This document shows, one piece after another, positions 6 through 52,732 of a stretch of 64,000 nucleotides of DNA. The stretch covers positions 124,001-188,000 of IMG/VR virus record IMGVR_UViG_3300042541_001760; one strand, 5' to 3'. The position numbers were made by a program, and so were the translations under genes. Every line of letters begins with the position of its first letter. Position 1 is the first letter of the stretch. The notes below the pieces were generated by a model. The model saw only the letters and a list, made by a program, of their open reading frames with translations, searched no databases and was not told the DNA's origin.

Positions 6-473
6 ATGAATATTTTCGTTTTAGATTGGGATATTAAACAGTGCGCAAAAGACCATTGTGATAAACATTGCGTTAAAATGATTCTTGAGACCGCTCAATT
101 ATTGTGTGGTGTTCATTGGTTGTTGGGTAATGACGCTCCATATAAATTGAGTCATAGGAATCACCCGTGTTCTATATGGACAAGAAAATCATTAAGTAAC
201 TATCTTTGGTTATGTGAATTAGGTTTAGAGTTATGTAACGAGTATACTCGTAGGTATGGTAAAACTCATAAGACTAAACAAATACTTGAATGGTGTTTAG
301 ATAATAAACCTCAAATCCCTGATATAGGTTTTACAGAACCATCATTAGCAATGCCTGACGATTATAAAACTAATGATGTTGTTGAATCTTATAGGAGATA
401 CTACGTTAATGATAAGAAAGAAATTGCTAAGTGGAAAGATGGATATGTTCCAAGTTGGTTTAAATTATCCTAA
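6..473 (+). CDS. Pyrimidine-dimer DNA glycosylase / T4 endonuclease V-like protein
   Basis: MNIFVLD...HCDKHCVKMILETAQLL...HRNHPC...W and YRRYY...K...W motifs typical of the phage Pyr_excise/DenV-like family. Confidence 0.75.
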   Translation: MNIFVLDWDIKQCAKDHCDKHCVKMILETAQLLCGVHWLLGNDAPYKLSHRNHPCSIWTRKSLSNYLWLCELGLELCNEYTRRYGKTHKTKQILEWCLDNKPQIPDIGFTEPSLAMPDDYKTNDVVESYRRYYVNDKKEIAKWKDGYVPSWFKLS

Positions 474-1357
474 GCAGTACAACCACCATCTCTACAGAAT
501 AAATTCTTTTCTTTTTCTCTTCTTGTTTTTAATCCTGAAAATCCGGCTTTATCTGAGTTGAATGTGAGTATCCTTTTTGATGCCTCAGCAAATTTACCCG
601 CTCTAACATAATCAATTAAATCGTTTTGGGCTGAATCTCCTCGTATTGATCCACATCCAGCATTAAACGTTAAAGAAGTTAAAGCATCAAACATGCTTTG
701 AGTTATCGTTCTATTAATGTTATTTCTTTTCCACTCACCGAATATTCTTTTAACGCAATCGGATGCGGTTTTAGTATCCTTTTGTAATAATTGCTCCGCC
801 TTTGATTGGTTTATTGTCATATTAGGTTTTACATTTTCACCTGTATGACCAAATCCTACGGTCCATTTATCACCTGGTACTCTATAAGATTTTAACATAG
901 GTTGACAATTAGAACCCGGTTTACCTTCTTCACATTTCAAAAACTTAATAAGTTCTTCGGAAGGTTGTAATGATAAAGGGTCTAGTAATGTTTTTTGTTG
1001 TGATGATGTCTTTTTTTGTGATGGTAATGTATTTTGTTTTTTACCATTTAAAATTAGATTTAAAAGTCCGTTGGTTTTAAAAATATTGTAAATTGTTTTT
1101 TTCTCCTCATCGGTAAACTCATAAGGTTCTAATATTATTTGTTGTAGATTTTGACTATGATTCTTAACTAATATATTATTAACAGAATTTAAAATATTCT
1201 GATTATTTATTAGTTTTAATGCGGAATACATTTTTTCTTCATCCGTACCAACACCACTAACAGACGACCATATAGTGTCGGCAATTTCTTGGGGGTTCGG
1301 GGATTTTAATTGCTCAATTAAAATTTTACACTGACTTTCATTAATTATTAACTTCAT
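470..1357 (-). CDS. Phage lysozyme (GH24) with N-terminal leader and annexin-like repeat
   Basis: C-terminal EEG...Y...WTVGFGH...FDALTSLTFNAG...GLKTRREKE is T4/P21-type muramidase; N-terminal MKLIINESQ leader and SGVGTDEEKMYSAL segment. Confidence 0.85.
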   Translation of the reverse strand: MKLIINESQCKILIEQLKSPNPQEIADTIWSSVSGVGTDEEKMYSALKLINNQNILNSVNNILVKNHSQNLQQIILEPYEFTDEEKKTIYNIFKTNGLLNLILNGKKQNTLPSQKKTSSQQKTLLDPLSLQPSEELIKFLKCEEGKPGSNCQPMLKSYRVPGDKWTVGFGHTGENVKPNMTINQSKAEQLLQKDTKTASDCVKRIFGEWKRNNINRTITQSMFDALTSLTFNAGCGSIRGDSAQNDLIDYVRAGKFAEASKRILTFNSDKAGFSGLKTRREKEKNLFCRDGGCTA

Positions 1358-1430
1358 ACATATAAATATACCGAAGTTGTATTGATATTAAGGATTTTTA
1401 TATTTATGATTTGAAAAAACAGAAACTATT

Positions 1431-1856
1431 ATGAAAAAAATTCAGAGCGGAGACACCGTAAAAGTAAATTACACAGGTAAATTTGAAGATGGATCAGTAT
1501 TTGACACATCTATGGTTGAAGGTAGAGAACCTTTGACAGTAACTTTGGGTCAAGGACAACTTATCCCAGGTTTTGAAAATGGTCTAATTGATATGACTAT
1601 TGGTGAAACAAAAACTATTGAGATTGAACCGAAAGACGCTTATGGTGAACCTGTTGAGGGTATGCTACAAGAGGTTGATAAATCTCAGCTTCCTGAAGAA
1701 CTTGAGGTTGGTGGTATGTTACAAGCACAAGGACCGGAAGGGGTATTTAATGTTGTTATCAAGGAAATTAAAGAAACTACCGTTATTTTGGATGCTAATC
1801 ACCCATTAGCAGGTAAAAAATTGGTATTTGATTTAGAAGTTGTTGAGGTAATGTAA
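1431..1856 (+). CDS. FKBP-type peptidyl-prolyl isomerase (SlyD/SlpA-like, no His tail)
   Basis: GDTVKVNYTGKFEDGSVFDTS...GQGQLIPGFE...DANHPLAGKKLVFDLEVVEV. Confidence 0.93.
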   Translation: MKKIQSGDTVKVNYTGKFEDGSVFDTSMVEGREPLTVTLGQGQLIPGFENGLIDMTIGETKTIEIEPKDAYGEPVEGMLQEVDKSQLPEELEVGGMLQAQGPEGVFNVVIKEIKETTVILDANHPLAGKKLVFDLEVVEVM

Positions 1857-1862
1857 TAAATT

Positions 1863-1891
1863 AAAACCCCAATCAAAAGTTGGGGTTTTTT
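1863..1891. terminator. Bidirectional intrinsic terminator-like hairpin
   Basis: AAAACCCC-AATCAAAAGTT-GGGGTTTTTT right after the FKBP stop. Confidence 0.7.
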
Positions 1892-2026
1892 AATTATGAA
1901 AGTAACTATTTTAGAATATTTAGGTAAGGGTATGTATTTGGTTATGTCTGATGACGGACAAACCTCAATATGTTCAGAAGAGGATATTGAGAGACTAAGA
2001 GAAATCGGTAATCTCCACGAATAACT

Positions 2027-2524
2027 CTATCTCAATTTAACTTTTAACGAATCAATGGAGGTTAGTATTTTGGAGAAGTCCAATTTAACCTTCTTTTTTT
2101 TGCGTTTCGGCGATGAAACCGATTTCCTCAATGGTTGGACAACCTCACAACTATCATAAACAACGATAGGGGTTACCACAATCTCTTCAGGTTGATATTC
2201 CACAGATTGATACTCCATTGACTTTATTCGGTCTCTAATCTCATCTAATTGATTTGTCATATCTCTTTTATCGGCAATTATTCGATCCTGTAATTCAACA
2301 ATAGTTGTAGTACATTCCGACTTACTATCAATAATTTGTTTATTTAGGGATATAATCTCATCCCTTTGTTCTTTGGTGAGTTCTTTAACATCCTTTTCAT
2401 CAAATATATTAATTACGGACGGTCCTAAAACTATTAAGATAATTGAAAACACAACTATCAGTAATGCCAATATTCTCTGTCCTTGTGTAAAATTTTTTAG
2501 TATCTGAGATATATATTTAAACAT
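2027..2524 (-). CDS. Membrane-anchored coiled-coil protein (possible lysis accessory)
   Basis: One N-terminal hydrophobic helix (ILALLIVVFSIILIVLG) then coiled coil; start moved to Met at 2524 downstream of TATTTATA. Confidence 0.5.
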   Translation of the reverse strand: MFKYISQILKNFTQGQRILALLIVVFSIILIVLGPSVINIFDEKDVKELTKEQRDEIISLNKQIIDSKSECTTTIVELQDRIIADKRDMTNQLDEIRDRIKSMEYQSVEYQPEEIVVTPIVVYDSCEVVQPLRKSVSSPKRKKKKVKLDFSKILTSIDSLKVKLR

Positions 2525-2565
2525 ATATATAAATATCTTACTATTTATATTAAACACACAAAATT

Positions 2566-3726
2566 ATGGTCAAATTTACGAAAGATGTTTTATTGGAGGC
2601 GTTAGGAGTCCCTGAAGGGATATTAAAGTCGGCGGAATCAATGTATAAGAAATTAATTAAATTTATTTCTGAGGAGGGTGATAATGATGTTGATGATGAA
2701 AATTATTATTTTAAGTTGGATGGACCTTTTAAAATTAATGAATATAAAATTAAATCAATAAATTTAAGATTAACATTTATAACAACAGATAATGTTGATA
2801 CCATAACTCTTGTTAGTATGGGATTTTCATCTAAGGTTAGATTTGATGATGTTAATTTAACACTTATTGACACTAACGATAAAAAGAATTTGGATATGTC
2901 TATTAATATAGCAATACCAGATACAATAACTTTCTCTGAATTATATCAATTTATTAAAGTTAAGGATAAAGACATAATATCGTCTTTTGCACACGAACTT
3001 AAACACTCTTACGATTCAGTTAAAAAACCTTTGGAGTCCATTGGAGACAGATCAAAATATGTCGCATACACTTCTTTTGGTATTGGATTAGAATCGATTG
3101 ATAAATTTATTTTTAACCTTTATTATACAACAGTAATAGAATCGTTAGTTAGACCTACGGAAGTTATGTCATTACTAAAACAAAATAAGGTTAAGAGGAA
3201 AAATTTCATAGATTTCCTTTTAAATAATGAGACATACACCACACTTAAAAAAATATATAACTTCTCATTAGAAAATTTAAGAATGGAGTTATCTAAAGAA
3301 ATACCAACCATTAATAAGATTTTAACTCAGTTAAATGAGCGTGGGAGATATAAAACTAACGAAGAAAAGATAGACAGGATATTATACCTAACATATATTA
3401 ATTTAGGTAATGATATGGGTAGAACATTCCAATCCGTCTTAACAACTCACCCATTTGAAGGTATTTTTGGTTTTATGGATAAAAGAAAGGATATGATGTT
3501 CAATGACTTCATTAAGGAAATATCAAAATTTAACGATAACCCTAATGATTTTTTTGAATATGAAGAAAAAAAGTTTAAATTTGTATCAAGTAAGATGATG
3601 AAAAAACTATCCAAACTTTACGCTATGTTACCTGAAGATAAGAAATCAATCAAAAATTGGGATTTACATCAAAAAATAACTAAGAGGGCTCCGCTTGAAT
3701 CAGTATCTATATTTAAAAAGGATTAA
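2566..3726 (+). CDS. Hypothetical protein with zincin-like HExxH motif
   Basis: SFAHELKH motif; TATTTATA at 2542-2549; leader ending LLE. Confidence 0.5.
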   Translation: MVKFTKDVLLEALGVPEGILKSAESMYKKLIKFISEEGDNDVDDENYYFKLDGPFKINEYKIKSINLRLTFITTDNVDTITLVSMGFSSKVRFDDVNLTLIDTNDKKNLDMSINIAIPDTITFSELYQFIKVKDKDIISSFAHELKHSYDSVKKPLESIGDRSKYVAYTSFGIGLESIDKFIFNLYYTTVIESLVRPTEVMSLLKQNKVKRKNFIDFLLNNETYTTLKKIYNFSLENLRMELSKEIPTINKILTQLNERGRYKTNEEKIDRILYLTYINLGNDMGRTFQSVLTTHPFEGIFGFMDKRKDMMFNDFIKEISKFNDNPNDFFEYEEKKFKFVSSKMMKKLSKLYAMLPEDKKSIKNWDLHQKITKRAPLESVSIFKKD

Positions 3727-4061
3727 TCCCAAACACTATCATATACAACCATAACTGAAAACTTTTCTGAGAACCATTTATTTATTGCATCACAAGTAAT
3801 ATCGTAGAAATCTTGCGGAGCCATATCTGAAGGTTTTAACGTCCTTGTTATTTGGTCTATAATTGACCCTTTATATTCCAACACCCTACCCTTTTTATTA
3901 TACAATAGTTCCCAATAATAATCTTCAGAATCATAATCAGCATCCATACTGCTAAATTTTTTTTTATCACAATATATATACTTACCATTCTCCTCAACAT
4001 CTTTACAATAATGTCTATCCATCCACTTACCTATTAATTTATCATATTTACTCATAATCAT
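3723..4061 (-). CDS. Hypothetical protein, distant member of the ~100 aa expanded family
   Basis: KLIGKWMDRHY near the N-terminus and KWFSEKF near the C-terminus resemble the MDIQVN-family pattern. Confidence 0.45.
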   Translation of the reverse strand: MIMSKYDKLIGKWMDRHYCKDVEENGKYIYCDKKKFSSMDADYDSEDYYWELLYNKKGRVLEYKGSIIDQITRTLKPSDMAPQDFYDITCDAINKWFSEKFSVMVVYDSVWD

Positions 4062-4081
4062 TCTATTTAATTATTCTGGTA

Positions 4082-4093
4082 TATTTATAAATA
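4082..4093. promoter_or_regulatory. Palindromic TATTTATAAATA (divergent late-type promoter motif)
   Basis: Perfect palindrome between divergent genes 3723-4061 and 4112-4426; same palindrome at 54057-54068. Confidence 0.55.
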
Positions 4094-4111
4094 TCAATTT
4101 TTATATAAAAT

Positions 4112-4426
4112 ATGAATCACAGGTTACCAATAATAGAAAAATTTATAATTAAATACTATCCTGATGTTATGGATGTTTATTTTACCGAAACAAGTGTATA
4201 TTTAGCGAGTTCTTTTGAATTACCTGAAGAAGAAAGGACTATTACTCAGACGGTAATAAATATAGTTATTAATAACTTAAAAAATAATTTACGTAATAGA
4301 AGTCAAAAAAATGAACTTATTAGTAATATAAACGATAGATTAAGTGGTTTTGGTGTTGACCAATTTGAATACGGTTCTAAATGGGGTACTCAATATCATA
4401 TTGCTGAGATTAAAAAGTATGAATAA
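4112..4426 (+). CDS. Hypothetical protein
   Basis: ORF 104 aa. Confidence 0.6.
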   Translation: MNHRLPIIEKFIIKYYPDVMDVYFTETSVYLASSFELPEEERTITQTVINIVINNLKNNLRNRSQKNELISNINDRLSGFGVDQFEYGSKWGTQYHIAEIKKYE

Positions 4427-4432
4427 GTTATT

Positions 4433-6013
4433 ATGAAAAAAAGATTAGACGAACAGATTAATAAAATAAAAAACATAATGGGTATTTCTGAATTAATAAC
4501 GGAAGTATCCAAAAAAGACATTTTAATTAATAAATTAGGTTTTAATGAGGGTAATGCAAATTATTTAGATAAATTGTGTGGTCCGTTATCTGTAATAATC
4601 GGCAAAAAACTTATTGATAGATTTGAAGATACTCAATCGGGGTTAAAACGTTTGAACGATTTCGGAATTAATAGATTATTTATGGGTGATATAACATCAA
4701 TAATGGATTGGATTAGAGTCGGTTTAAATGGTAATTTTACTTCATATAAAAATTTAACATTTGACGAACTTTATAATAAATCAATAGAATGGCATGACTC
4801 ACTTCAAATTGGTCAAGGAGAAATTAACTATGTTGAGAACCATCCAATTGCGGTAGATTTCAGGAAAGAGGATGGTACCGGTTTTTATTGGGTTGATTTG
4901 GAAACCAATGAGTCGGATGAAGAATGTGATAGAATGGGTCATTGTGGAAGAACAGATAAGGGTAATAACCTATTCTCATTAAGAGAAACGATTAAACTAC
5001 CAGGTGGAAAATACACATTGAATAGGAGTCATTTAACCGCATCTATAAGTGATGAGGGTATTCTATATCAATTAAAAGGTTCAAAAAACTCAAAACCTAA
5101 AGCTGAATTTCACCAATATATAGTTCCGTTATTTTTTATGATAGGTGGTGGGGGAGAAGAACACGATTATTATATTAATGGTTTTGGATCTGAATACGCA
5201 TCAAACTTAGATTTTAAATTATCCGATTTACCTGAAGAAAGTATTAAAGTATTATATAGAGATAGACCTGAATTATTTTCTGGTTATGGAATGCAGAAAT
5301 TATTAATTAAGATGGGTATAATTGAAAACAAAATATCTAGTGTTTTTGAACTTGAATTAGATACTGATGAAATTAGTGAATATGTTAATGGTGACTATGC
5401 CATATCCACAAGGAAATGGGTGGATGATAACGGTAATAAAAGAACGTCATCAAATTACCTATTTAAAGCCATTATGGAAGACCCTTGGGATTTGTGGAAT
5501 AATTATGATGTTGATTGGGAAAGTTCCTTACAATATCATGTTAACGATAAAAACGAAGCAAAGATAAGAGAAATTTTATCTAAGGATACGGAAGAAGACA
5601 CGTCAGAATATTCAATAGAGGATTTGATTGAAGAATTTGATGGTGGTGATATTGTTACGGCAATATCAATTGTGACAAGTGAAGCCGAACGTGATAGTTA
5701 CGGAAATATGTTAAGAAATACTTTAAAATCTTGTTTAGAAGAATATGGTAAAGTAACTAAATTTGATGATGAGGGTGTGAAAGTTACAATAGATTTGGAT
5801 AACTTCACAGATAACGTTGATGAGGAAGATTTAAATGAGTTTTTTGAAAATTGTAAAGATGAGCCCTCTTGCGTTTTTTATGATATAATGAATGGTAGTG
5901 GTTATGGTGGTTATGTAGACAAACCAAAATTTAGTGTTGATGAAAGATGGTATCCTGATATTAACGAGACGTATTTTAACGAATATTTAAGTGAAAGATT
6001 ATCTGAAATATAA
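4433..6013 (+). CDS. PcfJ-like domain protein with acidic C-terminal region
   Basis: EECDRMGHCG...FSLRE...HLTASI...LYQLKGSKNSKP matches the PcfJ-like pattern; leader MKKRLDEQINKIKNIM. Confidence 0.55.
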   Translation: MKKRLDEQINKIKNIMGISELITEVSKKDILINKLGFNEGNANYLDKLCGPLSVIIGKKLIDRFEDTQSGLKRLNDFGINRLFMGDITSIMDWIRVGLNGNFTSYKNLTFDELYNKSIEWHDSLQIGQGEINYVENHPIAVDFRKEDGTGFYWVDLETNESDEECDRMGHCGRTDKGNNLFSLRETIKLPGGKYTLNRSHLTASISDEGILYQLKGSKNSKPKAEFHQYIVPLFFMIGGGGEEHDYYINGFGSEYASNLDFKLSDLPEESIKVLYRDRPELFSGYGMQKLLIKMGIIENKISSVFELELDTDEISEYVNGDYAISTRKWVDDNGNKRTSSNYLFKAIMEDPWDLWNNYDVDWESSLQYHVNDKNEAKIREILSKDTEEDTSEYSIEDLIEEFDGGDIVTAISIVTSEAERDSYGNMLRNTLKSCLEEYGKVTKFDDEGVKVTIDLDNFTDNVDEEDLNEFFENCKDEPSCVFYDIMNGSGYGGYVDKPKFSVDERWYPDINETYFNEYLSERLSEI

Positions 6014-6541
6014 TTATAGGTAATCTACACTAATATTAAAACTTAAACCATTGTAGGGTTTATGTATCTTAGAATATATTGCCGATACTATATCACCTAT
6101 TTCATCACTTATTTCCCATAAGATATCTTCATACTCTTTATCACCCAAATTATTAAAATCAATACGATGTCCAGAATCAATTAAAGTCAGTTCTCCATCC
6201 ATTATTTGAGCCAAGACAGTTATATCTTCACCCCAATCACTACCATCTAATATTTCCATCATAAACCTAAATGAATACGACCCCATATTAACCACATCCG
6301 CATAGTCGTCTGTATTGAAAACTTTATTTTTAGTAATTCTGGTAAGATTACTTATTACATTATCCATACCACCAAAATACTCAATAAAAATCATTCTAAT
6401 AACCGCTTCATCAAATCCTGTAAGGATGGCTTTAACCACGGGATCATCAACTCTAGGTTTTTTACCTTGTAGTTTTATCTTATCGTAATAATTAAAAACT
6501 ACTTTTTTTAAAGGTTCGTATTCTTCCATACTAAAAATCAT
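6014..6541 (-). CDS. Hypothetical protein
   Basis: ORF 175 aa. Confidence 0.6.
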   Translation of the reverse strand: MIFSMEEYEPLKKVVFNYYDKIKLQGKKPRVDDPVVKAILTGFDEAVIRMIFIEYFGGMDNVISNLTRITKNKVFNTDDYADVVNMGSYSFRFMMEILDGSDWGEDITVLAQIMDGELTLIDSGHRIDFNNLGDKEYEDILWEISDEIGDIVSAIYSKIHKPYNGLSFNISVDYL

Positions 6542-8833: not shown

Positions 8834-8866
8834 ATTACTTATAAATATAAAATATTTTGAAATTGT

Positions 8867-8896
8867 TTTGTAGTGTTGTTTTTTTGCCTATCTTTG
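8867..8896 (+). promoter_or_regulatory. Bacteroidota housekeeping-sigma promoter
   Basis: TTTG (8867-70), 18 nt spacer, TATCTTTG (8889-96), matching the established -33/-7 consensus. Confidence 0.7.
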
Positions 8897-8919
8897 TAAA
8901 ACCAAAAACTAAACGACCT

Positions 8920-9672
8920 ATGATGACTCACGAAATGATTAAACAAGTTGCTCCCTCAGTGTTCGCAACATCTCCATCTCCAAAAGTATCTAGCAGATAC
9001 GTATTCGTTCCGACTATGGACATTATTGAAAACTTTGAACGCGAAGGTTGGAATGTCGCCTCAGCAAAACAAACAGGTCGTGGCATACACGGACTCCACG
9101 AGATTAAATTCCGAAATGGTGACTTACCAAATGTTGGTGACACATTAATTGAAGCAATTATTAAGAACTCCCACAACGGGGTGGCAACATTAAACATTAG
9201 TTCAGGATTACACCGATTAGTATGTTCAAATGGTCTAACGGTACCGACATCAGTATCGGATTCATTTAAAGTTAGACACTCAGGATTTGAATTTGAGGAT
9301 GTGAAACGATTAACAGAAGATTTCTCAAAGCGTCTTCCTATCATCCAAGGTTCTGTAAACAGAATGATGGAACACCAATTAACAATGGACGAGAAATTAA
9401 AATTCGCAAAGAAGTCCGCTGAGGTTCGTTGGGGTATTGGATCAGTTCCCGTAACTTTAAATTACGATAGTATCTTAAATCCTCTCCGTGATGAGGACAA
9501 AGGTGACTCACTATGGCAAGTATTCAATGTCGTTCAAGAGAAGTTTATTCGTGGTGGTGTGGAATATACAACAAACTCAGGAAGAAAGACAGGGTTGAGA
9601 ACAATGAACGACATTTATAATGTCAATAGAATTAACACCAAACTTTGGGAATTAGCTGAAGATATGTTTTAA
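8920..9672 (+). CDS. DUF932 / DUF945 family phage protein
   Basis: APSVFA...SSRYVFVPT...NSHNG...GLHRLVCSNGL...LWQVFNVVQE...N..LWELA; start moved to Met at 8920. Confidence 0.8.
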   Translation: MMTHEMIKQVAPSVFATSPSPKVSSRYVFVPTMDIIENFEREGWNVASAKQTGRGIHGLHEIKFRNGDLPNVGDTLIEAIIKNSHNGVATLNISSGLHRLVCSNGLTVPTSVSDSFKVRHSGFEFEDVKRLTEDFSKRLPIIQGSVNRMMEHQLTMDEKLKFAKKSAEVRWGIGSVPVTLNYDSILNPLRDEDKGDSLWQVFNVVQEKFIRGGVEYTTNSGRKTGLRTMNDIYNVNRINTKLWELAEDMF

Positions 9673-10038
9673 CTAAACGGGGGTGGAAACACCCCCACTT
9701 TCTACTTATATGGACAATATTTCACTCTGCGAATCACATATTTCATTATTTCACAAATTCTTTAAGATTGGTGAAATTAAGATAGGACCTAAGGTTATAA
9801 CCGGAACCGGAATGACATATGGTAGAGTTCAAATTATATCAAGAAAACCAAATCCATTTTTGGATGATTATCGATATATTAGTATATACGATGATGATAT
9901 TTTGGGTTGTAATGTTTTTTCAGTTTTTTTTGATAGGTATCTTTCGGTAACATCAAGTAACCAATTTACATTATATCTACATTTAAAACAAATCTACGCT
10001 AGTGTGGATAAAGAATTTAATAAAAATGTTTTAGATAG

Positions 10039-10833
10039 TTAAATATTTTTATCCTCTTTTAATATTCTGAATCTTAATAGTGGTTTTCCGTTAATTGTAA
10101 TATCACCCTTTTCATTTTTACCAATTGTCTTAACAATAACTTTTTTATTTTTAAACTTACCACCCATAACGACATCACCAACATTAATATCAAGTTTTAT
10201 CATTTCGGATAGGGGGTTATTTTGTGTTTTTAACTTATAGGCAACTATTTCATAAGCCTTTCTAAGGTCGTGACTCCAAGCGTTATCAAGCCATCCTTCA
10301 CTATATTCGTTTGAGTTGGATCTGATAAAATCCATCATTTCACCATCTGAAATTTTTTCAGGTATTTCTATCTCACCTGGACATATAGCACCTTTAAAAT
10401 CATAACTTTCACAATACGAAACTTCTATCTCAGGATGACCCATCTCCTCACCAAATTTAGTGGTATAGTTGTCGTCATACCACTCCGCAATAACATTTAA
10501 GACATAACTTTCTCTAATGGAAAATAACCTTTTAATGTCATCAATAATTTTTTTTGAAAAAACTATGTGTCCTTCATTAAAATTATGAAGTTCAGGACCG
10601 TCATCGTCTTCATCATTATTAAAATAATAAATCGATCTGGCAATTACAACACCGTTCTTACACCAGTGTTCATCAAGGTTACCATAAAATTCTTTAGGGT
10701 CACCGACAATCCTTTTAGCTCCGACCATTTGTTTATTTAGGTAAGATATAATAACCTTTTCCATATTAGCATTTGATCTAACATATTTTTTTTGACTTTC
10801 TTCTCGTAATACTTTTCTAATTAGGTCTTTCAT
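10039..10833 (-). CDS. Hypothetical leader-bearing two-module protein
   Basis: MKDLIRKVLREE leader; internal PLSE followed by a small beta-rich module (DINVGDVVMGGKFKNKK). Confidence 0.55.
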   Translation of the reverse strand: MKDLIRKVLREESQKKYVRSNANMEKVIISYLNKQMVGAKRIVGDPKEFYGNLDEHWCKNGVVIARSIYYFNNDEDDDGPELHNFNEGHIVFSKKIIDDIKRLFSIRESYVLNVIAEWYDDNYTTKFGEEMGHPEIEVSYCESYDFKGAICPGEIEIPEKISDGEMMDFIRSNSNEYSEGWLDNAWSHDLRKAYEIVAYKLKTQNNPLSEMIKLDINVGDVVMGGKFKNKKVIVKTIGKNEKGDITINGKPLLRFRILKEDKNI

Positions 10834-10836
10834 ATT

Positions 10837-11163
10837 TTAAGGGCAGTTATCTGAATATTTATCTCTAATTAAAGTTCCGTATTTCTCTTCAAGATAAGTA
10901 TTAATAATATCATAATACGATTCAAGAATTTCTGTATTTAAATTTTCATCTTCACCAAAATGACTTAAATACTTATGATAAAACATTTCAAAAACATACT
11001 GAAACACAACCTCAAAGAACGTATTTTCATTATCATATTCATCACAATTATATTCTAACATTTTATTGCTATATATTGACTCAAATTTAGTGGTCATAAT
11101 TTCGTCAACATAAGACAATCTCCTTAACACAAAACTTTGATTCTCATTAATTATAATCTTCAT
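10837..11163 (-). CDS. Hypothetical protein (paralog of 12820-13113)
   Basis: Shared VLRRL...CDxYD...YLxxKxG pattern; MKIIINE leader. Confidence 0.55.
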   Translation of the reverse strand: MKIIINENQSFVLRRLSYVDEIMTTKFESIYSNKMLEYNCDEYDNENTFFEVVFQYVFEMFYHKYLSHFGEDENLNTEILESYYDIINTYLEEKYGTLIRDKYSDNCP

Positions 11164-11238
11164 ATCAATAAATACATAAAAAAGGGGGTAGGGGGAAATT
11201 TTCTGAAAAAAAATTATTAAAATTTATCTTTTTTTAGT

Positions 11239-12354
11239 TCATTTTTCATATAATGGTTTGTCGTTAAACGTGATAAATTTACCACCTCCTGATACAACAT
11301 AATCCTTATTATCAAATATATAGTATTTGTCACCCTTAGTGTTTATGAAAATGAATCTATCCACGGTAGTTCCGTATTTTTTCATACTATGAGTCGGGAT
11401 TAAATATTTACCATCTTCGGTCATTTTCATATCACCCGTCAAAGGTTTAACCTGATAATACATATTCTCCCCATTTATTCTCAAATCCCTCCCGTTTTTA
11501 GTATCCTCAATTGATCCGGGACAGTATTGGGTTATTCCACCCTCATCAACACTATGTAACGGCATTAGAATCCCCAACGCCATTTGTTCTCTGATATAAC
11601 CTGGTCTTAGTGTGCTTAAATTTAACTCTTCAAGTTTCGGTAAATGGTCTGATTTAGGTGCGAATAACTCACGTTTGTTATTTTCCAACCATTTAAAAAA
11701 ATCTTTGGATTTAAATTTATCTGGAGTAATATCACTTTCATTTAAAAATAGATTAACCAAGTATGTTATTACTTTACTATTTGTGTTGAAGTAATTAAGA
11801 ATAGACCAATCAGACACCAACTTATCATTAGGTCCGTATTTAACCCCCATAAAATTGATTACACCACTATTAGTCTTACAATTATCGTCCTTAACTGACT
11901 CCCCATACATCGGCTCGCCCACATCATTAGTTAAATCACCATATAATGATTTCATTATAGAATTCATTTTGGTCATAAAGAAACTTTTACTCTTAATATC
12001 ACTAACAATTGAACCTACGGTAATGTTTAAATCAAAGTCGGGGTTGTATTTTTTAAAATTATCTACAGTGATAAAAAACGCTTTATTATTTGTTGTTGAT
12101 TTTAAAACAGATTTTCCTTTCACATCCATAGAAGGAAATAGGAATGTTCCTCCTTCACCGACCAATTTAAATTCGGGGGTTGGCGCTTCATCATCCTTAT
12201 ACCACCCAAATATTGGATTATCATCTACTAATTCAATATTATTAAAATAAATTATATCCTCTCTTACATTAATGTCGGAAAATTTATAAGTGCCAGAATC
12301 AAAATCCATGGCCTGTTCCAATATTATATCCCTTACTAAATTAACTAATTTCAT
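11239..12354 (-). CDS. Hypothetical protein with possible PD-(D/E)xK nuclease C-terminal domain
   Basis: E...D.KNGRDL...YYQVK spacing is restriction-endonuclease-like; leader MKLVNLVRDIILEQ. Confidence 0.35.
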   Translation of the reverse strand: MKLVNLVRDIILEQAMDFDSGTYKFSDINVREDIIYFNNIELVDDNPIFGWYKDDEAPTPEFKLVGEGGTFLFPSMDVKGKSVLKSTTNNKAFFITVDNFKKYNPDFDLNITVGSIVSDIKSKSFFMTKMNSIMKSLYGDLTNDVGEPMYGESVKDDNCKTNSGVINFMGVKYGPNDKLVSDWSILNYFNTNSKVITYLVNLFLNESDITPDKFKSKDFFKWLENNKRELFAPKSDHLPKLEELNLSTLRPGYIREQMALGILMPLHSVDEGGITQYCPGSIEDTKNGRDLRINGENMYYQVKPLTGDMKMTEDGKYLIPTHSMKKYGTTVDRFIFINTKGDKYYIFDNKDYVVSGGGKFITFNDKPLYEK

Positions 12355-12393
12355 TTAAATTGTGTTATATAACTATAAATATACAAAAAATTT

Positions 12394-13415
12394 TTATTGT
12401 TCGTCTTCTTCAAAATAGATATCAATTATCTCATTCATAGACAAACCCAATTTATCAATACCACACATCTTCATAAACTCACGATCGGTAAGCCAACCGT
12501 CCTCATCAAACATCAGGTGGTCATCACCATTTATATGTTGTTGATATATATAAACCGCATCCTTATTCATAGTAATTAGATACATGGGACCATGATTATT
12601 TAAAAGATAATTAACTCTGTCAGTTGGAATTATGCCGTCAAAAGAGGATGGAACTTGATACCTATTTGTAATCATTTTAATTTTTCCTGTAAGGTCAAAA
12701 TTAAATTTGTTCCTCAAAAACTCTTTGAACTTAGATTGGTTAACTATATATTTCATTTATAGTAAATATATACTTAAAAGGTAATTTAATCTATTTATAT
12801 ATAAATAACTAACACAATTATGGATTATAGAGATAAACTTGATAGTAGAGTTCTTAGAAGGCTTAACGATGATGATTTGGAGTACGAATTTAATTTCCTA
12901 TTGGATGAAGATATGTCGGGGGTGGGATTCAACCCCTGTGATTATGATTACGTCGGTTATTTTGTTGAGGACGTATGTGAGGAACTAAGGGGTAGTTATC
13001 TTGATAATATTGAAATAAAGACAGACCCCAAGACAAGTGACTTTTTATATTCTTATCTTATTGATAAATTTGGGGATACCCTAGCGGAGATTTATTATAA
13101 GAGGAAATGTTAATTTGGTATGGTTGGATACATACTAAAATCGTAATTAAGTTTCTCGGATAAGTATTCCCTAAATATATCGGATAGGTCTCCGTAACTA
13201 ACACCGAAGAAAGAATGCATCTTAGCAAATAGTTCGTGGCTGACCAATATCCTATCCCTACGTAAAGTAATGTGAATTATGTACTCCTTATCATCACTAC
13301 TAATAACTAGATAATTTTCTTCTCTAAGTAAATCCTTATCAAATCCGCTAGCATCAAAATTGGTGTCCAACCACCTAAACAAAAACCCCTTAAATTTATC
13401 CGTTATTTCATTCAT
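12394..13415. CDS. Three short hypothetical genes (12394-12756 -, 12820-13113 +, 13110-13415 -)
   Basis: ORFs each preceded by TATTTA-type motifs. Confidence 0.6.
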
Positions 13416-13478
13416 AATTTATAAATACTCAGTAAAACAAAAAACCCCACCTTTGTGGGATGGGGTTTAAAATATATA

Positions 13479-14636
13479 TTAATATGTTATTTTTACATCG
13501 GGGAAAGCTTCTTTGGCACATCCAAATAGTAATTTCGCATCTTTACCTAAGTCAACCGCACATTTACCTGTATCCCACATAGATGGCACTTCACCCTTTT
13601 TTGCGGAATTAATAACCGATGTACAAGATTCCGTCATTTTTTTATTGGGGAAATTTTTCTGGTAACAAGCGTTAAATTTTTTAATGGTGTCCGATGGTTT
13701 TCCTTGTGTTTGTTGTTCATTAATCTTACTTTTAACCATCTTTTTATTCTCAAGTATTATTGTCATGTTTCCACCAACAGTACTCACAATTGTAGGTTTA
13801 CCACTTCTTTTTGCTATCATATTTAAATGATTAACAATTTTATACTTTTCCGCCGAGTCGTCAAATAATTGGTCATTTAAGAAATTTTGTAAACTACCCA
13901 TTCTAGCGTCTACCATTGCTCTATTTAAATCTTTAATATCAGAATATGTTTGTAGTTTTAAAATTCCCGCAAGTATATCTTGTTCATCGACATTATCCAC
14001 CAACCAATTATTAACAATTGAACTAGCATCAATTAACTTACCACTAATATTACCAATTTGTACGTCATTAAGACCTTTGGTTGTTATTGGTTCAATAACT
14101 ATTGAACATATTCTTTCCTCGGAATCTGGTTTAACTTTAGCAGGATCATAAAAATCTCTATCAATTTTAGATGGGGTGTATGATTTATTGCTTTGGACTA
14201 ATAGTTTATAAGCAACGTCATCTCTAATACCCAATTCGCTCATTACCTGAAGGTAAAGATTGGTTAAATATGACATTCTCTTCTCAGCAACCCTTTTATT
14301 AGTACCGAAATCACCAGTTGATGATGTACCAACATAAAAAGTCACCAATTGAGGTAAATCAAATTTATTACTATTATGGAATTTTTGTATTGTAGGTATG
14401 GAACTTGTAATACGTTCTTTAATAAATTCTTTAACTTTGTTAGATGTTTCAGGTTTAAATTGATACTGACCTTCACCAAATAAAAACATACCTACACTAG
14501 TATCTCCACCATCGGTAGGTACCGGCTCAGGTTCAGGCATTGGGCTAGCCTCATTAATCTTAGATTTCAATATTCTATTTTCAAGAATCATATTAGATTC
14601 CTGCATGTGTCTTATTTTACTGTAACTTTTTCTCAT
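13479..14636 (-). CDS. Multi-module protein with OmpA-like domain, degenerate annexin-like segment and duplicated leader
   Basis: F.EG...YVGTSSTGDFGTNKRVAEKRM resembles the OmpA C-terminal domain; ILEN..KSKINE occurs twice. Confidence 0.45.
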   Translation of the reverse strand: MRKSYSKIRHMQESNMILENRILKSKINEASPMPEPEPVPTDGGDTSVGMFLFGEGQYQFKPETSNKVKEFIKERITSSIPTIQKFHNSNKFDLPQLVTFYVGTSSTGDFGTNKRVAEKRMSYLTNLYLQVMSELGIRDDVAYKLLVQSNKSYTPSKIDRDFYDPAKVKPDSEERICSIVIEPITTKGLNDVQIGNISGKLIDASSIVNNWLVDNVDEQDILAGILKLQTYSDIKDLNRAMVDARMGSLQNFLNDQLFDDSAEKYKIVNHLNMIAKRSGKPTIVSTVGGNMTIILENKKMVKSKINEQQTQGKPSDTIKKFNACYQKNFPNKKMTESCTSVINSAKKGEVPSMWDTGKCAVDLGKDAKLLFGCAKEAFPDVKITY

Positions 14637-14649
14637 AATATATTAATTA

Positions 14650-15018
14650 TTAAACGTAACTACTATCGTTTGACTTTGATTTATTTTGTGTAAACTCCTC
14701 ACAAAAAGATTGAAAGTATTTATCACCTTCAGGGGTAAATTTGTATCTATAAAAATCTCTAAAATCGTCTTTTACTTTATGTCCTGGACAACTGTACCAA
14801 AATTCATGAACTTCTTCCCCTCCACTAGCTTTAAAGTATATATCAATACCTTTAGGTTCGGTACTATATACCGTAATGTTACTGAACAAGGCTCCTGTCA
14901 CATCATTTAACAATTTTAATTTTTTTCCAGATCCACCTTCATTATTGGATTGTTCACTTAGAACTCTTTTTACTAATCTAACTAGATCGTTTTCTGTTAA
15001 TCTTACAATTTTTCTCAT
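14650..15018 (-). CDS. Leader-bearing hypothetical protein
   Basis: MRKIVRLTENDLVRLVKRVLSEQ. Confidence 0.65.
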   Translation of the reverse strand: MRKIVRLTENDLVRLVKRVLSEQSNNEGGSGKKLKLLNDVTGALFSNITVYSTEPKGIDIYFKASGGEEVHEFWYSCPGHKVKDDFRDFYRYKFTPEGDKYFQSFCEEFTQNKSKSNDSSYV

Positions 15019-15058
15019 AATATATTTTTAATTATAAATACTCAGATTTTCTAAAAAA

Positions 15059-16330
15059 TTATGCAGTTGGGTTGGTGGGTGATGTATTATTTTGTTTTAG
15101 TGCCAATTGATTAATATTTTGCCACATTTGATTTACATCAGTAAAACCTCTTTGGGCCCAACATAAAAATAACCAATAGATATCTACACTAGATTTCTCT
15201 CTAGTAATATATGGTTTTATCATATCTAAAGTTATGTTCTGACCTGGTTTTATCCCTAGAAGCCGTCTAATACCGGTAATATTTGACATTTTTTCAGTTT
15301 CTCTACAAATATATCCAGGGTCATGGGCGTAGTCCTTAATGATTTCATTTTTTCTTGCATCTATAATTGATATATATTTTGGATCCACATTTAATTTTTT
15401 CGCCGCCGCGGTAATTTCTGGTGAATACGTTGTGGTTTTATTGGAAGGGTTATAAAGGAAACTACTTTTGATTTGTTCTTTTGATTTTTTTTCGGAATCA
15501 TTTTTACCAAAAACAGAAGATATTTTCTCTTCAGGATTAAGTGGTTTTATGTCATAAATCATATGTTGAATTTCATGTATCAATATTTCATCAATTTCTT
15601 CTTCGTACGAAGACGAAAAAGAACAATTTACATATATGTTCCCATCAGGTCCATTAACAAATGCTATAGCATCATCGTGATCCGGATGAATACCATTAAT
15701 TTTTATTGTTCTATCATTATAAAAATTTAATTTTATTTTATTAAGTAATTCAAAGTATTTTGGATAGTATAAGGTGACCGCATACGGTTTATCGATATAA
15801 TTTGACAAAAACTTCTTTTTAGTTATTGGATCTGAGAGCCAATCTCTCCACCATTTTATAGCTCCAGGTAATGACTTACTCCAAAGTGATTTACATGATG
15901 CCATATCTGTAGTTGTAACGGAGTATCCATCACCCCCTGATAGTCGGAAACCCTCCATAAAGGTAGTCATACCACCATTATTTTTCCCAAAATTTGCCGT
16001 AGTGAAAACATTTATGTTATGAAGCGTAGCGATTAGAGACTCAACATCTTCCGCATTATCCCTTTCATATTCTTCGTTAATCATCTCAAAAAAATCGGAA
16101 TATCCCGTTTTTTTGTCTTTAAATAATGTTAATAAATATTTGAACTCATTTTGGTTCTTCAATTTTTTTATGGCTGAGAGTACTCCATCCGGATCGGTTC
16201 CCCAACCCTCAACCGCATCAATTATTTCGTTATAAATGGTAATTACAGAACTATTTGATTGGTCTTCCATAATAACCCTTTTAACAATACGAGTTAAATC
16301 AGATTCCGTTAATTTTATAACTTTTTTCAT
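15059..16330 (-). CDS. Putative metallopeptidase with annexin-like repeat and N-terminal leader
   Basis: MKKVIKLTESDL leader; AVEGWGTDPDGVLSAI; ILIHEIQH zincin motif with downstream E. Confidence 0.55.
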   Translation of the reverse strand: MKKVIKLTESDLTRIVKRVIMEDQSNSSVITIYNEIIDAVEGWGTDPDGVLSAIKKLKNQNEFKYLLTLFKDKKTGYSDFFEMINEEYERDNAEDVESLIATLHNINVFTTANFGKNNGGMTTFMEGFRLSGGDGYSVTTTDMASCKSLWSKSLPGAIKWWRDWLSDPITKKKFLSNYIDKPYAVTLYYPKYFELLNKIKLNFYNDRTIKINGIHPDHDDAIAFVNGPDGNIYVNCSFSSSYEEEIDEILIHEIQHMIYDIKPLNPEEKISSVFGKNDSEKKSKEQIKSSFLYNPSNKTTTYSPEITAAAKKLNVDPKYISIIDARKNEIIKDYAHDPGYICRETEKMSNITGIRRLLGIKPGQNITLDMIKPYITREKSSVDIYWLFLCWAQRGFTDVNQMWQNINQLALKQNNTSPTNPTA

Positions 16331-16361
16331 AATATAATTTTAATTATAAATACTAAGGGGG

Positions 16362-26471: not shown

Positions 26472-26478
26472 ATTTTTT

Positions 26479-52297: not shown

Positions 52298-52732
52298 TTA
52301 ATCCACCAAATTTAATTGTCGGGTAATATCTCTCTCCTTGATTGTGTTGCGTTTATCATACTCTTTCTTACCCTTACAAACAGAAATCTCCATCTTTAAG
52401 AATCCCCTCTCATTTAAGTATAATCTTGTTGGTATGATTGTTACCCCCTTTATAAGTTCTTTCTTTAACTTATCCAACTCTTTGCGTTTGAGTAATAACT
52501 TACGATGTCTTAACGGATCGTGTGAGTATGCGGTGTTGTTACCGGGTATGTTCATCCCAACAACGAATAGTTCATCACCTTGAAACATACAATAACTATC
52601 TACGAGTGATACCTGACCCGCTCTGATTGCCTTTACTTCGGATCCCACCAATTGGATACCCGCATGTTCCTGACGAAGAAAGTGATAATCAAATTTTGCC
52701 TTTTTATTAACAATATTTATTGTCTGTTTCAT
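52298..52732 (-). CDS. smpB: SsrA-binding protein SmpB
   Basis: NKKAKFDY...AGIQLVGSEVKAIR...HDPLRHRKLLL..KEL..L...G.TIIP..LY...KGKKEYDKR..IKERD. Confidence 0.95.
   Translation of the reverse strand: MKQTINIVNKKAKFDYHFLRQEHAGIQLVGSEVKAIRAGQVSLVDSYCMFQGDELFVVGMNIPGNNTAYSHDPLRHRKLLLKRKELDKLKKELIKGVTIIPTRLYLNERGFLKMEISVCKGKKEYDKRNTIKERDITRQLNLVD

What the first reader, a model, noticed from the sequence alone, without database searches (positions are those of the whole stretch)
470..16330. Annexin-like GTDE repeats fused to a lysozyme, a metallopeptidase and an OmpA-like protein
Seen: IWSSVSGVGTDEEKMYSAL (470-1357), IIDAVEGWGTDPDGVLSAI (15059-16330) and a degenerate VDNVDEQDILAGI (13479-14636), each followed by similar helical spacing. 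Established: GxGTDE..I is the annexin repeat signature for Ca2+-dependent phospholipid binding, and prokaryotic annexin-like domains are sparse. Inference: a membrane-docking module on leader-tagged envelope enzymes.
Basis: partly seen in the sequence, partly recalled or inferred. Interest (0 to 1): 0.65.

Follow-up and report, generated by a model that had tools for sequence, protein, structure and literature searches.

The report
Annexin-like repeat on phage wall proteins
A freshwater jumbo phage puts a single annexin-type repeat (the calcium- and membrane-binding unit of eukaryotic annexins) on three cell-wall-directed proteins, a combination I could not find reported for any virus, and each protein also carries an N-terminal tag that resembles a T4-style capsid-targeting propeptide.

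Summary
Three minus-strand genes of a 261-kb lake-water jumbo phage each carry one five-helix annexin-type repeat. It is fused to a GH24 lysozyme (470-1357), to an invariant-HExxH zincin-like domain (15059-16330), or to an OmpA-like peptidoglycan-binding fold (13479-14636, where the GxGT loop is lost).

Sequence profiles, profile-profile links, two confident AlphaFold models and two independent structure searches all point to annexins and giardins. A profile built only from the phage modules retrieves Pfam-verified annexins from 1.8 billion proteins. Pfam's own annexin model misses the phage modules, so this is a divergent subfamily.

G44, T45 and the D/E-turn Glu (E87) are 93-97% conserved across 96 representative proteins. 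Fusion partners are almost always peptidoglycan-binding or peptidoglycan-degrading domains.

The "leader" is not a secretion signal. It ends in hydrophobic-x-Glu-Gln. The phage has a T4-ordered head module with a gp21-type protease. The tagged genes share an upstream motif with the head genes. I therefore read the leader as a capsid-targeting propeptide (inferred).

Ca2+/lipid binding, cleavage and packaging are all untested. I rate this a new variant of a known kind.

The parts
470..1357 (-). P0001, 295 aa: short leader + annexin-type repeat + Q/K/S-rich linker + GH24 lysozyme
1310..1357 (-). P0001 leader, residues 1-16, ending L-I-E-Q
1049..1303 (-). P0001 annexin-type repeat, residues 19-103. 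G35-V-G37-T38, with E77 at T+39 (canonical annexin spacing)
509..895 (-). P0001 GH24 lysozyme domain, residues 155-283 (the family-invariant Glu E144 lies just upstream). It is the only PF00959 match in the genome
1361..1368 (-). TATTTATA promoter-like motif, 11 nt upstream of the P0001 start
15059..16330 (-). P0003, 423 aa: long leader + annexin-type repeat + HExxH zincin-like domain
16265..16330 (-). P0003 leader, residues 1-22, containing K-L-T-E and V-I-M-E
15986..16264 (-). P0003 annexin-type repeat, residues 23-115. G42-W-G44-T45, with E87 at the D/E turn
15062..15913 (-). P0003 C-terminal domain, residues 140-423, with invariant HEIQH (252-256, nt 15563-15577). A zincin-like domain of no named family
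16345..16352 (-). TATTTATA promoter-like motif, 22 nt upstream of the P0003 start
14650..15018 (-). Leader-tagged 122-aa ORF between P0003 and P0002. The gaps of 40 and 13 nt suggest one transcription unit
13479..14636 (-). P0002, 385 aa: diverged leader + OmpA-like domain + degenerate annexin-type repeat + Cys-rich helical tail
14076..14534 (-). P0002 OmpA-like peptidoglycan-binding fold, residues 35-187, with invariant N113 and R120
13764..14075 (-). P0002 degenerate annexin-type repeat, residues 188-291 (helices 191-277). GxGT is replaced by V-D-N-V-D-E, and an acidic D259/D260 sits at the D/E turn
13482..13691 (-). P0002 C-terminal three-helix domain with four Cys. It follows a degenerate internal copy of the leader

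Best explanation
Three late-class genes of an uncultured T4-like jumbo phage from lake water (host probably Bacteroidota) encode cell-envelope proteins. Each contains one divergent annexin repeat: five helices A-E, a GxGT(D/N) loop between A and B, and a conserved Glu at the D/E turn.

Shown: the module is homologous to annexin repeats. It is fused to a GH24 lysozyme, an HExxH zincin-like domain and an OmpA-like peptidoglycan-binding fold. In metagenomic relatives its partners are again peptidoglycan binders or hydrolases.

Inferred: the module is a Ca2+-bridged docking unit for anionic lipid surfaces (inner membrane, inner leaflet of the outer membrane, or lipid A). It would hold wall-binding or wall-cutting domains at the membrane-wall interface, copying the 'membrane anchor plus peptidoglycan binder' logic of OmpA, Pal and MotB. 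It would be off at cytoplasmic Ca2+ levels and on in the periplasm.

Also inferred: the N-terminal leader, which ends in hydrophobic-x-Glu-Gln, is a T4-type capsid-targeting propeptide removed by the phage's gp21-family prohead protease. If so, these proteins are packed into the head and delivered to the next host's envelope at infection, while a separate leaderless amidase carries out lysis.
For: Homology:
- The P0001 module alone hits annexin VI at 1.9e-6 and annexin A5 at 4.4e-4.
- Its family profile hits only annexins in the PDB: 60 of 60 listed, annexin VI 3.6e-12, A5 1.3e-5.
- Profile links: P0001-P0003 at 97%, 3.9e-11; P0003-P0002 at 80.5%, 1.3e-5.
- The AF2 model of the P0003 module has pLDDT 93 and five helices.
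- About 45 of the 50 best Foldseek hits are annexins.
- The 7 best of 48,161 chains by VIA are annexins or giardins, Z 9.2-6.8. Annexin I domain 1 aligns 73 of 73 residues at 2.4 A.
- P0002 residues 191-274 independently match giardins at Z 8.8/8.7.
- The phage-only profile finds 561 representatives, and all 10 multi-repeat hits tested are PF00191 annexins at 1e-35 to 1e-86.

Calcium site: G44 96%, T45 97% and E87 93% across 96 representatives. P0001 has the exact T+39 Glu spacing.

Partners: GH24; OmpA-like fold, 50 of 50 Foldseek hits and Z 9.7; PG_binding_1 in 16 of 67, plus M23, Hydrolase_2 and PG_binding_3.

Leader:
- Phi-x-E-Q occurs in 52 of 76 non-redundant leaders, versus 4.5 +/- 2 in shuffles, and is about 90-fold denser there than in the rest of the proteins.
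- A Peptidase_S77 protease is present (83 bits) within a T4-ordered head module.
- T4 CTS biology is described in PMC9026906.
- The TATTTAT[AT] motif lies upstream of 77 of 350 genes (about 5 expected). These include head genes and 7 of 9 strict-leader genes, Fisher p 5e-4.
- A leaderless Amidase_3+LysM endolysin candidate exists elsewhere in the genome.
Against: - Pfam's annexin model does not match any of the three proteins, any of 40 family members, or the six-frame genome, even at E<=10.
- Foldseek E-values for the 93-residue module are weak (0.24-1.4). VIA Z values of 7-9 lie in a range where helical folds can match by arrangement alone (note).
- The P0003-type profile also hits designed helical repeats that share a G-T-D/E helix cap.
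- A single repeat offers only one Ca2+ site, whereas annexins bind membranes with four or more. No lipid or Ca2+ binding was or could be tested.
- P0002 lacks GxGT altogether.
- The leader also occurs internally in P0002-family homologues. Its P1' residue is Gln, not the small residue I recall for T4 sites.
- No virion proteomics exists for this uncultured phage, and the leader-core complex prediction gave no answer.
- Late expression fits an endolysin role for P0001 equally well.
Confidence: 0.6

Rival explanations
1. The module is annexin-derived, but it works as a cell-wall (peptidoglycan or polysaccharide) binding domain or a protein-protein adaptor. That would make it the N-terminal targeting domain of modular Gram-negative phage lysins, not a lipid binder.
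For: The architecture of an N-terminal binding module followed by a C-terminal catalytic domain is that of jumbo-phage endolysins such as KZ144 (from memory). All identifiable partners act on peptidoglycan. One repeat gives little avidity for a membrane.
Against: The module very often sits beside a bona fide peptidoglycan binder: PG_binding_1 in 16 of 67, plus OmpA-like and LysM. A second wall binder would be redundant. The residues under strongest selection are exactly the annexin Ca2+-site residues.
Confidence: 0.2
2. The proteins are ordinary late lysis or envelope proteins released through a holin. On this reading the leader is not a capsid-targeting signal but an inhibitory or oligomerising propeptide, or a recombination cassette boundary that eases domain shuffling.
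For: P0001 is the only GH24 in the genome and carries the late-type upstream motif. The leader also occurs between domains in P0002-family fusions, as expected for a module boundary. No packaging data exist.
Against: A separate leaderless Amidase_3+LysM protein fits the endolysin role. The leader is found on many unrelated small proteins, and in a related 321-kb contig on a sigma-70-like protein, which a lysis role does not explain. Its one near-invariant feature is a hydrophobic-x-Glu end, in a phage with a gp21-type protease.
Confidence: 0.25
3. The resemblance to annexins is convergent: a generic helix-loop-helix with a G-T-D/E N-cap, not a homologous annexin repeat.
For: Pfam PF00191 does not match. 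Designed helical repeats top the P0003-profile PDB search. Foldseek E-values are above 0.2.
Against: The P0001-family profile hits annexins exclusively, down to 3.6e-12. The phage profile retrieves Pfam-verified annexins at 1e-10 to 1e-55, with full-repeat alignments. A bridging protein, P0355, carries both a Pfam annexin repeat and a phage-type module. Two independent models have annexins or giardins as their best structural matches over the full 73-76 residues.
Confidence: 0.05

Closest known systems
Eukaryotic annexin repeat (Pfam PF00191; annexins A1-A13, Giardia alpha-giardins)
   Same: Five-helix A-E fold, a GxGT(D/E) loop between A and B, and an acidic residue at the D/E turn with the exact T+39 spacing in P0001. 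These are the best structural matches (Z up to 9.2) and show significant profile similarity.
   Different: One repeat instead of a four- or eight-repeat core. Not detected by the Pfam model. The B-to-D region is 3 residues longer in the P0003 type. Encoded by a phage and fused to peptidoglycan-directed domains. Ca2+ and lipid binding not shown.
Bacterial annexins (Kodavali et al. 2014, PMC3894181; mostly Bacteroidetes)
   Same: Single- or few-repeat annexin domains with a conserved GxGTD, combined with other domains including Zn-metalloproteases. The likely host phylum is the one richest in bacterial annexins.
   Different: That survey found 34 proteins in 17 species and none in viruses. Here the family is viral, large (at least 96 single-module cluster representatives), and paired with lysozyme, OmpA-like, PG_binding_1 and M23 domains rather than toxins or lipase. 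It also carries phage-type leaders.
T4 internal proteins and Alt with capsid-targeting sequences (CTS) cleaved by gp21
   Same: A short N-terminal tag on otherwise unrelated, variable proteins. The tag ends in hydrophobic-x-Glu. The phage has a gp21-family protease and a T4-ordered head module, and the tagged genes share an upstream motif with the head genes.
   Different: No sequence similarity to the T4 CTS. There are several distinct leader types of 15-35 residues. Gln follows the Glu. The cargo is envelope-directed rather than anti-restriction or RNA-polymerase-modifying. Cleavage and packaging are not shown.
OmpA / Pal / MotB-type peptidoglycan anchors
   Same: The P0002 core has their fold (50 of 50 Foldseek hits, Z 9.7) and an invariant Asn-x6-Arg pair. 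The overall logic of a membrane-associating element plus a wall binder is the same.
   Different: There is no beta-barrel, lipid anchor or transmembrane helix; an annexin-type repeat stands in that place. Pfam OmpA is not matched. The Asp of the canonical wall-binding pair appears to be replaced by Ser.
Virion-delivered wall hydrolases (T7 gp16 transglycosylase domain, T4 gp5 lysozyme; from memory)
   Same: A phage-carried muralytic activity used at entry rather than at lysis is an established principle.
   Different: Those enzymes are parts of core or tail structural proteins. Here the enzymes would be free, leader-tagged capsid cargo with a lipid-docking module.

Membership tests
Annexin repeat (PF00191 / annexin superfamily) | Five alpha-helices A-E in the annexin arrangement | tested here: met
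   AF2 of the P0003 module: pLDDT 93, helices 2-18, 25-33, 38-50, 58-65, 68-82. P0002 helices 191-205, 218-225, 231-243, 249-256, 261-277. Best matches are annexins and giardins over 73-76 residues at 2.4-3.0 A.
Annexin repeat (PF00191 / annexin superfamily) | GxGT(D/E) type II Ca2+ loop between helices A and B | tested here: met
   P0001 has GVGTDE and P0003 has GWGTDP. G44 is 96% and T45 97% conserved in 96 representatives. Not met in P0002 (VDNVDE), as in annexin repeats that have lost the site.
Annexin repeat (PF00191 / annexin superfamily) | Acidic ligand at the D/E turn, about 38 residues after GxGT | tested here: met
   P0001 E77 = T38+39. P0003 E87 = T45+42, at the end of helix D, 93% Glu in the family.
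Annexin repeat (PF00191 / annexin superfamily) | Match to the curated Pfam model above its gathering score | tested here: not met
   No PF00191 hit for the three proteins (E<=1), for 40 P0003-family modules (E<=10), or for the six-frame genome (E<=10).
Annexin repeat (PF00191 / annexin superfamily) | Significant profile similarity to proteins that are annexins by the curated model | tested here: met
   The phage-module profile retrieves them at 1e-10 to 1e-55, and 10 of 10 tested are PF00191 at 1e-35 to 1e-86. PDB annexins are hit at 3.6e-12.
Annexin repeat (PF00191 / annexin superfamily) | Ca2+-dependent binding to acidic phospholipids | not testable with these tools
   Needs liposome co-sedimentation or ITC.
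Annexin repeat (PF00191 / annexin superfamily) | Core of four (or eight) repeats | tested here: not met
   There is one repeat per protein. Single-repeat bacterial annexins are accepted in the literature.
GH24 phage lysozyme (PF00959) | Pfam match, and a catalytic Glu followed by the T-x-G-x-G-H segment | tested here: met
   89.4 bits against a cut-off of 22.3. E144 and T166-V-G-F-G-H are invariant in the family. The Asp20-equivalent of T4 lysozyme (from memory) is not at the canonical position in P0001, where D163 lies 3 residues away. It is canonical in the 40%-identical relatives.
OmpA-like peptidoglycan-binding domain (PF00691) | Fold, and a curated model match | tested here: inconclusive
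   The fold is met: 50 of 50 Foldseek hits, best E 9e-4; VIA Z 9.7 over 117 residues. The Pfam model is not matched in any of 40 members at E<=1. N113 and R120 are invariant.
Zincin metallopeptidase | HExxH on a helix plus a third zinc ligand, and the zincin fold | tested here: inconclusive
   H252, E253 and H256 are invariant in 40 sequences. There are only sub-threshold hits to DUF6782, M78, M35 and DUF2268 and no PDB sequence match. The Atlas model is poor (pLDDT 0.58), with TM 0.30-0.38 to SprT, YgjP and DUF2201. The third ligand was not identified and I did not predict the fold.
T4-type capsid-targeting propeptide | N-terminal tag ending in hydrophobic-x-Glu, in a phage with a gp21-family protease | tested here: met
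T4-type capsid-targeting propeptide | Cleavage by the prohead protease and presence of the cargo in the capsid | not testable with these tools
   The phage is uncultured and the complex prediction gave no answer.

The most novel reading that the evidence does not exclude
A widespread clade of freshwater T4-like jumbo phages loads its capsids, through a diversified set of gp21-cleaved targeting leaders, with an arsenal of envelope-remodelling proteins: lysozyme, transglycosylase, zincin, and OmpA-like and PG_binding_1 anchors. These would be switched on by periplasmic Ca2+ through a single annexin repeat. On this reading, the long-'in abeyance' prokaryotic annexin class is largely a phage-borne module that circulates between phages and Bacteroidota.
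Probability: 0.3. Interest if true: 0.8.

Novelty: new variant of a known kind. Interest (0 to 1): 0.62.

Why it matters
Annexins are treated as essentially eukaryotic. The only systematic survey of prokaryotes found 34 proteins and none in viruses, and a 2024 review still lists prokaryotic annexins as a class 'in abeyance'.

A large phage-encoded single-repeat family with its Ca2+-site residues under strong selection has three consequences:
- It gives the simplest natural annexin unit on which to test how one repeat binds Ca2+ and lipid.
- It bears on the origin of the annexin repeat.
- It suggests a new kind of targeting domain for Gram-negative lysins, docking to lipid rather than to the wall, which could be useful for engineered enzybiotics.

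The leader observation, if confirmed, would extend T4's capsid-targeting system to a very different jumbo-phage lineage. It would also provide a sequence rule (leader plus hydrophobic-x-E-Q) for predicting injected proteins in uncultured phages.

Tried and rejected
- Pfam annexin model: no match to the proteins, the family members or the genome. Recorded as a failed membership criterion, not as evidence against homology.
- P0003 module alone against PDB sequences: no annexin. The best hit was 4dwe_A at E 0.039, and the family profile did not reproduce it.
- BLASTP of the P0003 N-terminus against P0002: nothing. The link needed profiles.
- GenBank phages (50,697 records): no tblastn match for P0003, the P0001 module or P0002.
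- Literature: no paper holds the leader peptide string, and none describes a viral or phage annexin.
- Whole-P0003 family profile against the PDB: no peptidase match.
- Complex prediction of the P0003 leader (residues 1-45) with the scaffold-position protein and the prohead protease: 'no answer', score 0.00. This is neither support nor evidence against.
- Peptidase_S78 (HK97-type protease): absent.
- One search was a malformed reference of mine. One search failed because alignment A7 was too diverse for pattern search; I repeated it with A2.
- The residue labels were shifted by 3 and were corrected.
- A secretion-signal reading of the leader was rejected by inspection: the first 25 residues are charged and amphipathic, with no hydrophobic run.
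- Read laying was not used. Only genetic code 11 was used.
- The costly exhaustive protein search was used once. The family scans had left the module unnamed, and the homology claim needed a bridge to curated annexins.


Full report
**Setting.** The window is bases 124001-188000 of a 261-kb IMG/VR viral record with about 31% G+C.
- The record has a T4-ordered head module: large terminase, portal, two small ORFs, a prohead protease, an acidic 493-aa protein in the scaffold position, and a gp23-type major head protein.
- Near-identical DNA is present in at least 23 further lake-water metagenome runs, besides the run that may be the source.
- The closest bacterial relatives of its SmpB homologue are overwhelmingly Bacteroidota. 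This is a weak host hint, consistent with the Bacteroidota-style lipoprotein signal peptides seen in the window.

**Observation.** The three ORFs and the quoted peptides are present on the minus strand.
- P0001 (470-1357): a 16-residue leader, a module at residues 19-103 with G-V-G-T-D-E, a low-complexity linker, and a GH24 lysozyme (PF00959, 3.1e-25).
- P0003 (15059-16330): a 22-residue leader, a module at 23-115 with G-W-G-T-D-P, and a C-terminal domain with HEIQH.
- P0002 (13479-14636): a diverged leader, a core at 35-187, a segment at 188-291 with V-D-N-V-D-E, and a Cys-rich tail.
- In the whole genome, the GxGT motif in this helical context occurs only in P0001 and P0003.

**Is the module an annexin repeat? 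Sequence evidence.**
- The P0001 segment alone hits annexin VI (1.9e-6) and annexin A5 (4.4e-4) among PDB sequences.
- A profile of its family (A6) hits annexins only, 60 of the 60 listed: annexin VI 3.6e-12, A5 1.3e-5, XII 3.2e-5, III 6e-5.
- The P0003 family is large, with 318 word-search hits and no annotation. Its module profile (A2) reaches annexin VI at 1.3e-5 and annexin V at about 0.015 over a whole repeat. It also hits designed helical repeats with a similar G-T-D/E helix cap, so it is not decisive on its own.
- Profile-profile comparison ties the three modules together: A6-A2 at 97.2%, E 3.9e-11; A2-A4 (P0002 family) at 80.5%, E 1.3e-5; A6-A4 at 44.6%, E 2.3e-4.
- Pfam's annexin model itself does not match the proteins, 40 family members or the six-frame genome. 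This is a divergent branch, and one formal membership criterion fails.

**Structural evidence.**
- AlphaFold2 on the P0003-module alignment gives pLDDT 93.3 and pTM 0.85, with five helices.
- Foldseek E-values are weak (0.24-1.4), as expected for 93 helical residues. Still, about 45 of the 50 best hits are annexins, with TM 0.56-0.60 and about 3 A rmsd.
- The search that does not depend on Foldseek puts annexin-family chains in the first seven places of 48,161: alpha-11 giardin Z 9.2, annexin A2 8.4, alpha-14 giardin 8.4, annexin A8 7.5, and annexin I domain 1 Z 7.1 with 73 of 73 residues at 2.4 A.
- The full P0002 model (pLDDT 77) independently gives alpha-14 and alpha-11 giardin at Z 8.8 and 8.7, and annexin I domain 1 at Z 6.9, for residues 191-274. 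Its five helices have nearly the same lengths as in P0003.
- The tool's caveat applies: Z below about 8-13 for helical proteins can reflect a common arrangement. The fold evidence therefore counts only together with the sequence evidence.

**The bridge to curated annexins.** An exhaustive HMMER search of 1.84 billion representatives, using a profile made only of phage modules (A7), gave 561 proteins at E<=0.001 and 111 at E<=1e-10.
- Among them are many long proteins with 4-9 matched stretches. All ten that I tested are annexins by Pfam's own model (1e-35 to 1e-86).
- The alignments cover whole repeats, including the GxGT loop and the downstream acidic position.
- One hit, P0355, has PG_binding_1, a Pfam-recognised annexin repeat and a phage-type module in the same chain.
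- The protein atlas gives the same picture at lead level: the nearest clusters are viral, followed by bacterial 'annexin domain-containing' clusters, mostly Bacteroidota.

**Ca2+-site residues.** The literature defines the repeat by five helices A-E, GxGTD as the type II Ca2+ motif between A and B, and a Glu in the D/E turn (PMC3894181; PMC10882027).
- In 96 representative single-module proteins, the most conserved columns are exactly these: G44 96%, T45 97%, E87 93%, G42 78%.
- In the model, E87 lies at the end of helix D.
- P0001 has the canonical spacing, with E77 at T38+39. The P0003 type has three extra residues before helix D.
- P0002 has lost GxGT and keeps only acidic residues at the D/E turn, like annexin repeats that no longer bind Ca2+.
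- Binding itself was not testable.

**Partners.**
- The P0002 core is OmpA-like at fold level: 50 of 50 Foldseek hits are OmpA, Pal, MotB or YfiB domains, with a best E of 9e-4; VIA Z is 9.7 over 117 residues. N113 and R120 are invariant, but there is no Pfam OmpA match.
- The P0003 C-terminal domain has invariant H252, E253 and H256. It shows only sub-threshold similarity to several zincin families and weak resemblance to SprT, YgjP and DUF2201 models. 'Metallopeptidase' is therefore likely, but the family and substrate are unknown.
- Of 67 other single-module proteins, 16 carry PG_binding_1, and one each carries Peptidase_M23, GH24, Hydrolase_2 and PG_binding_3. P0002 homologues add LysM.
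- The module therefore travels with peptidoglycan binders and hydrolases. Because it so often sits beside a genuine wall binder, a second wall-binding role seems redundant. A membrane-docking role would complete the 'membrane anchor plus wall binder' design of OmpA, Pal and MotB. This is an inference.

**The leader.** A leader HMM finds nine ORFs in the genome, always at the extreme N-terminus.
- In relatives, several unrelated-looking leader types precede the module. What they share is the end: hydrophobic-x-Glu, usually followed by Gln.
- Phi-x-E-Q occurs in 52 of 76 non-redundant leaders, versus 4.5 +/- 2.0 (maximum 13) in shuffles. Its density is 2.64 per 100 residues in leaders and 0.03 in the rest of the same proteins.
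- The leader-terminal Glu is nearly invariant in all the family alignments.
- The leaders are charged and amphipathic, so they are not Sec or Tat signals.
- The phage encodes a gp21-family prohead protease (PF03420, 83 bits; phrog_207, 1.5e-43). Its own capsid protein has L-I-N-E followed by Ala just upstream of the conserved core, and the scaffold-position protein has V-S-E-Q.
- In T4, short N-terminal capsid-targeting sequences deliver unrelated proteins into the prohead core. gp21 removes them by cutting after Glu, and the cargo is injected with the DNA (PMC9026906).
- An upstream element, TATTTAT[AT], lies 8-45 nt before 77 of 350 genes, where about 5 are expected. It marks the protease, the scaffold-position gene, other head-region and large structural-looking genes, P0001, P0003 and 7 of the 9 strict-leader genes (Fisher p 5e-4). 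The thymidylate-synthase-like and methylase genes lack it.
- P0002 follows the preceding leader gene after 13 nt and is probably co-transcribed.
- The genome also has a leaderless Amidase_3+LysM protein, a conventional endolysin candidate. It has further leader-tagged wall proteins as well: GDSL-like + PG_binding_1 + SLT, and a PG_binding_1 protein.
- A related 321-kb contig shows an array of leader-tagged genes around the P0003 homologue, including a sigma-70-like protein and an SLT-like protein.
- Together this favours a capsid-targeting propeptide, at about even odds. The rival is a propeptide or module boundary of late lysis proteins. The internal leader copies in P0002-family fusions fit either view.

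**Known or new.** The 2014 survey found about 34 bacterial annexins in 17 species, most of them Bacteroidetes and some fused to Zn-metalloproteases, with 'no annexins ... in Archaea or viruses'.
- My searches of the held literature found no later report of a viral or phage annexin.
- None of the three proteins has a relative in 50,697 GenBank phage records.
- At least seven other IMG/VR contigs and hundreds of metagenomic clusters do carry relatives.
- I therefore file it as a new variant of a known kind: a bona fide but divergent annexin repeat in a new host (phage), a new copy number (one) and a new partnership (wall enzymes and anchors).

**Limits.**
- Function is inferred throughout.
- Model coordinates could not be inspected.
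- The zincin fold was not predicted.
- The complex job gave no answer.
- The host is only hinted at.

Noticed in passing
window 16345-16352, 1361-1368 and 75 other genes genome-wide: A promoter-like element, TATTTAT[AT], lies 8-45 nt upstream of 77 of 350 genes (about 5 expected). It marks head genes, large structural-looking genes and leader-tagged genes. It is the reverse complement of the T4 late-promoter core as I recall it (TATAAATA).
   Followed up: partly
genome 110815-111549 (+), outside the window (L094): A leaderless Amidase_3 + LysM protein, the conventional endolysin candidate of this phage.
   Followed up: partly
genome 76565-78019 (+) (L095) and 96007-97455 (-) (L096), outside the window: Further leader-tagged wall proteins. 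One combines a GDSL-like acylhydrolase (below cut-off), PG_binding_1 and an SLT transglycosylase. The other carries PG_binding_1.
   Followed up: partly
L011:15394-16014 and L011:19365-20090 (a related 321-kb contig): A sigma-70 region-2 protein and an SLT-like protein both carry the same kind of N-terminal leader. If the leader is a capsid-targeting tag, the sigma factor would be injected.
   Followed up: no
alignment A3 (P0002 family), columns about 600-640: In many homologues a full copy of the leader recurs internally, between the module and extra C-terminal domains such as LysM or DUF5856 fusions. P0002 itself has a degenerate copy at about residues 296-310.
   Followed up: partly
window 32415-34486, 52930-53624 (and genome 192750-193061): A tandem paralogue family of about 100-120-aa proteins that all start M-D-I-Q-V-N-K-x-Q-L-E-R-V. 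There are at least nine copies, several with the TATTTAT motif upstream.
   Followed up: no
window 25410-26510: Four small adjacent ORFs share a T-A-V-E-W-L-V motif near the N-terminus. This is a second tandem paralogue family.
   Followed up: no
window 52298-52732 (-): A phage-encoded SmpB homologue (the tmRNA partner). Its nearest bacterial relatives are Bacteroidota at 45-57% identity. A related contig also has SmpB.
   Followed up: partly
window 60449-61801 (-): A 450-aa leader-tagged coiled-coil protein with a weak match to a 'head maturation protease' PHROG (phrog_530, 2.3e-4). It lies far from the head module.
   Followed up: no
window 6-473 (+), 8920-9672 (+), 1431-1856 (+): A pyrimidine-dimer DNA glycosylase-like protein (PF03013, phrog_624), a DUF932 protein, and an FKBP/SlyD-like N-terminus (by eye) flank the P0001 gene.
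   Followed up: no
P0001 Cys142/151 and 288/293; P0002 Cys324/338/359/373; P0003 Cys342/390 (invariant): Paired cysteines in all three proteins hint at disulfides and therefore at an extracytoplasmic site of action.
   Followed up: no
PDB 4dwe_A residues 274-341 versus P0003 33-97: A weak (E 0.039) but visually suggestive match to a solved Bacteroides 'phage tail component domain protein'. The family profile did not reproduce it.
   Followed up: no
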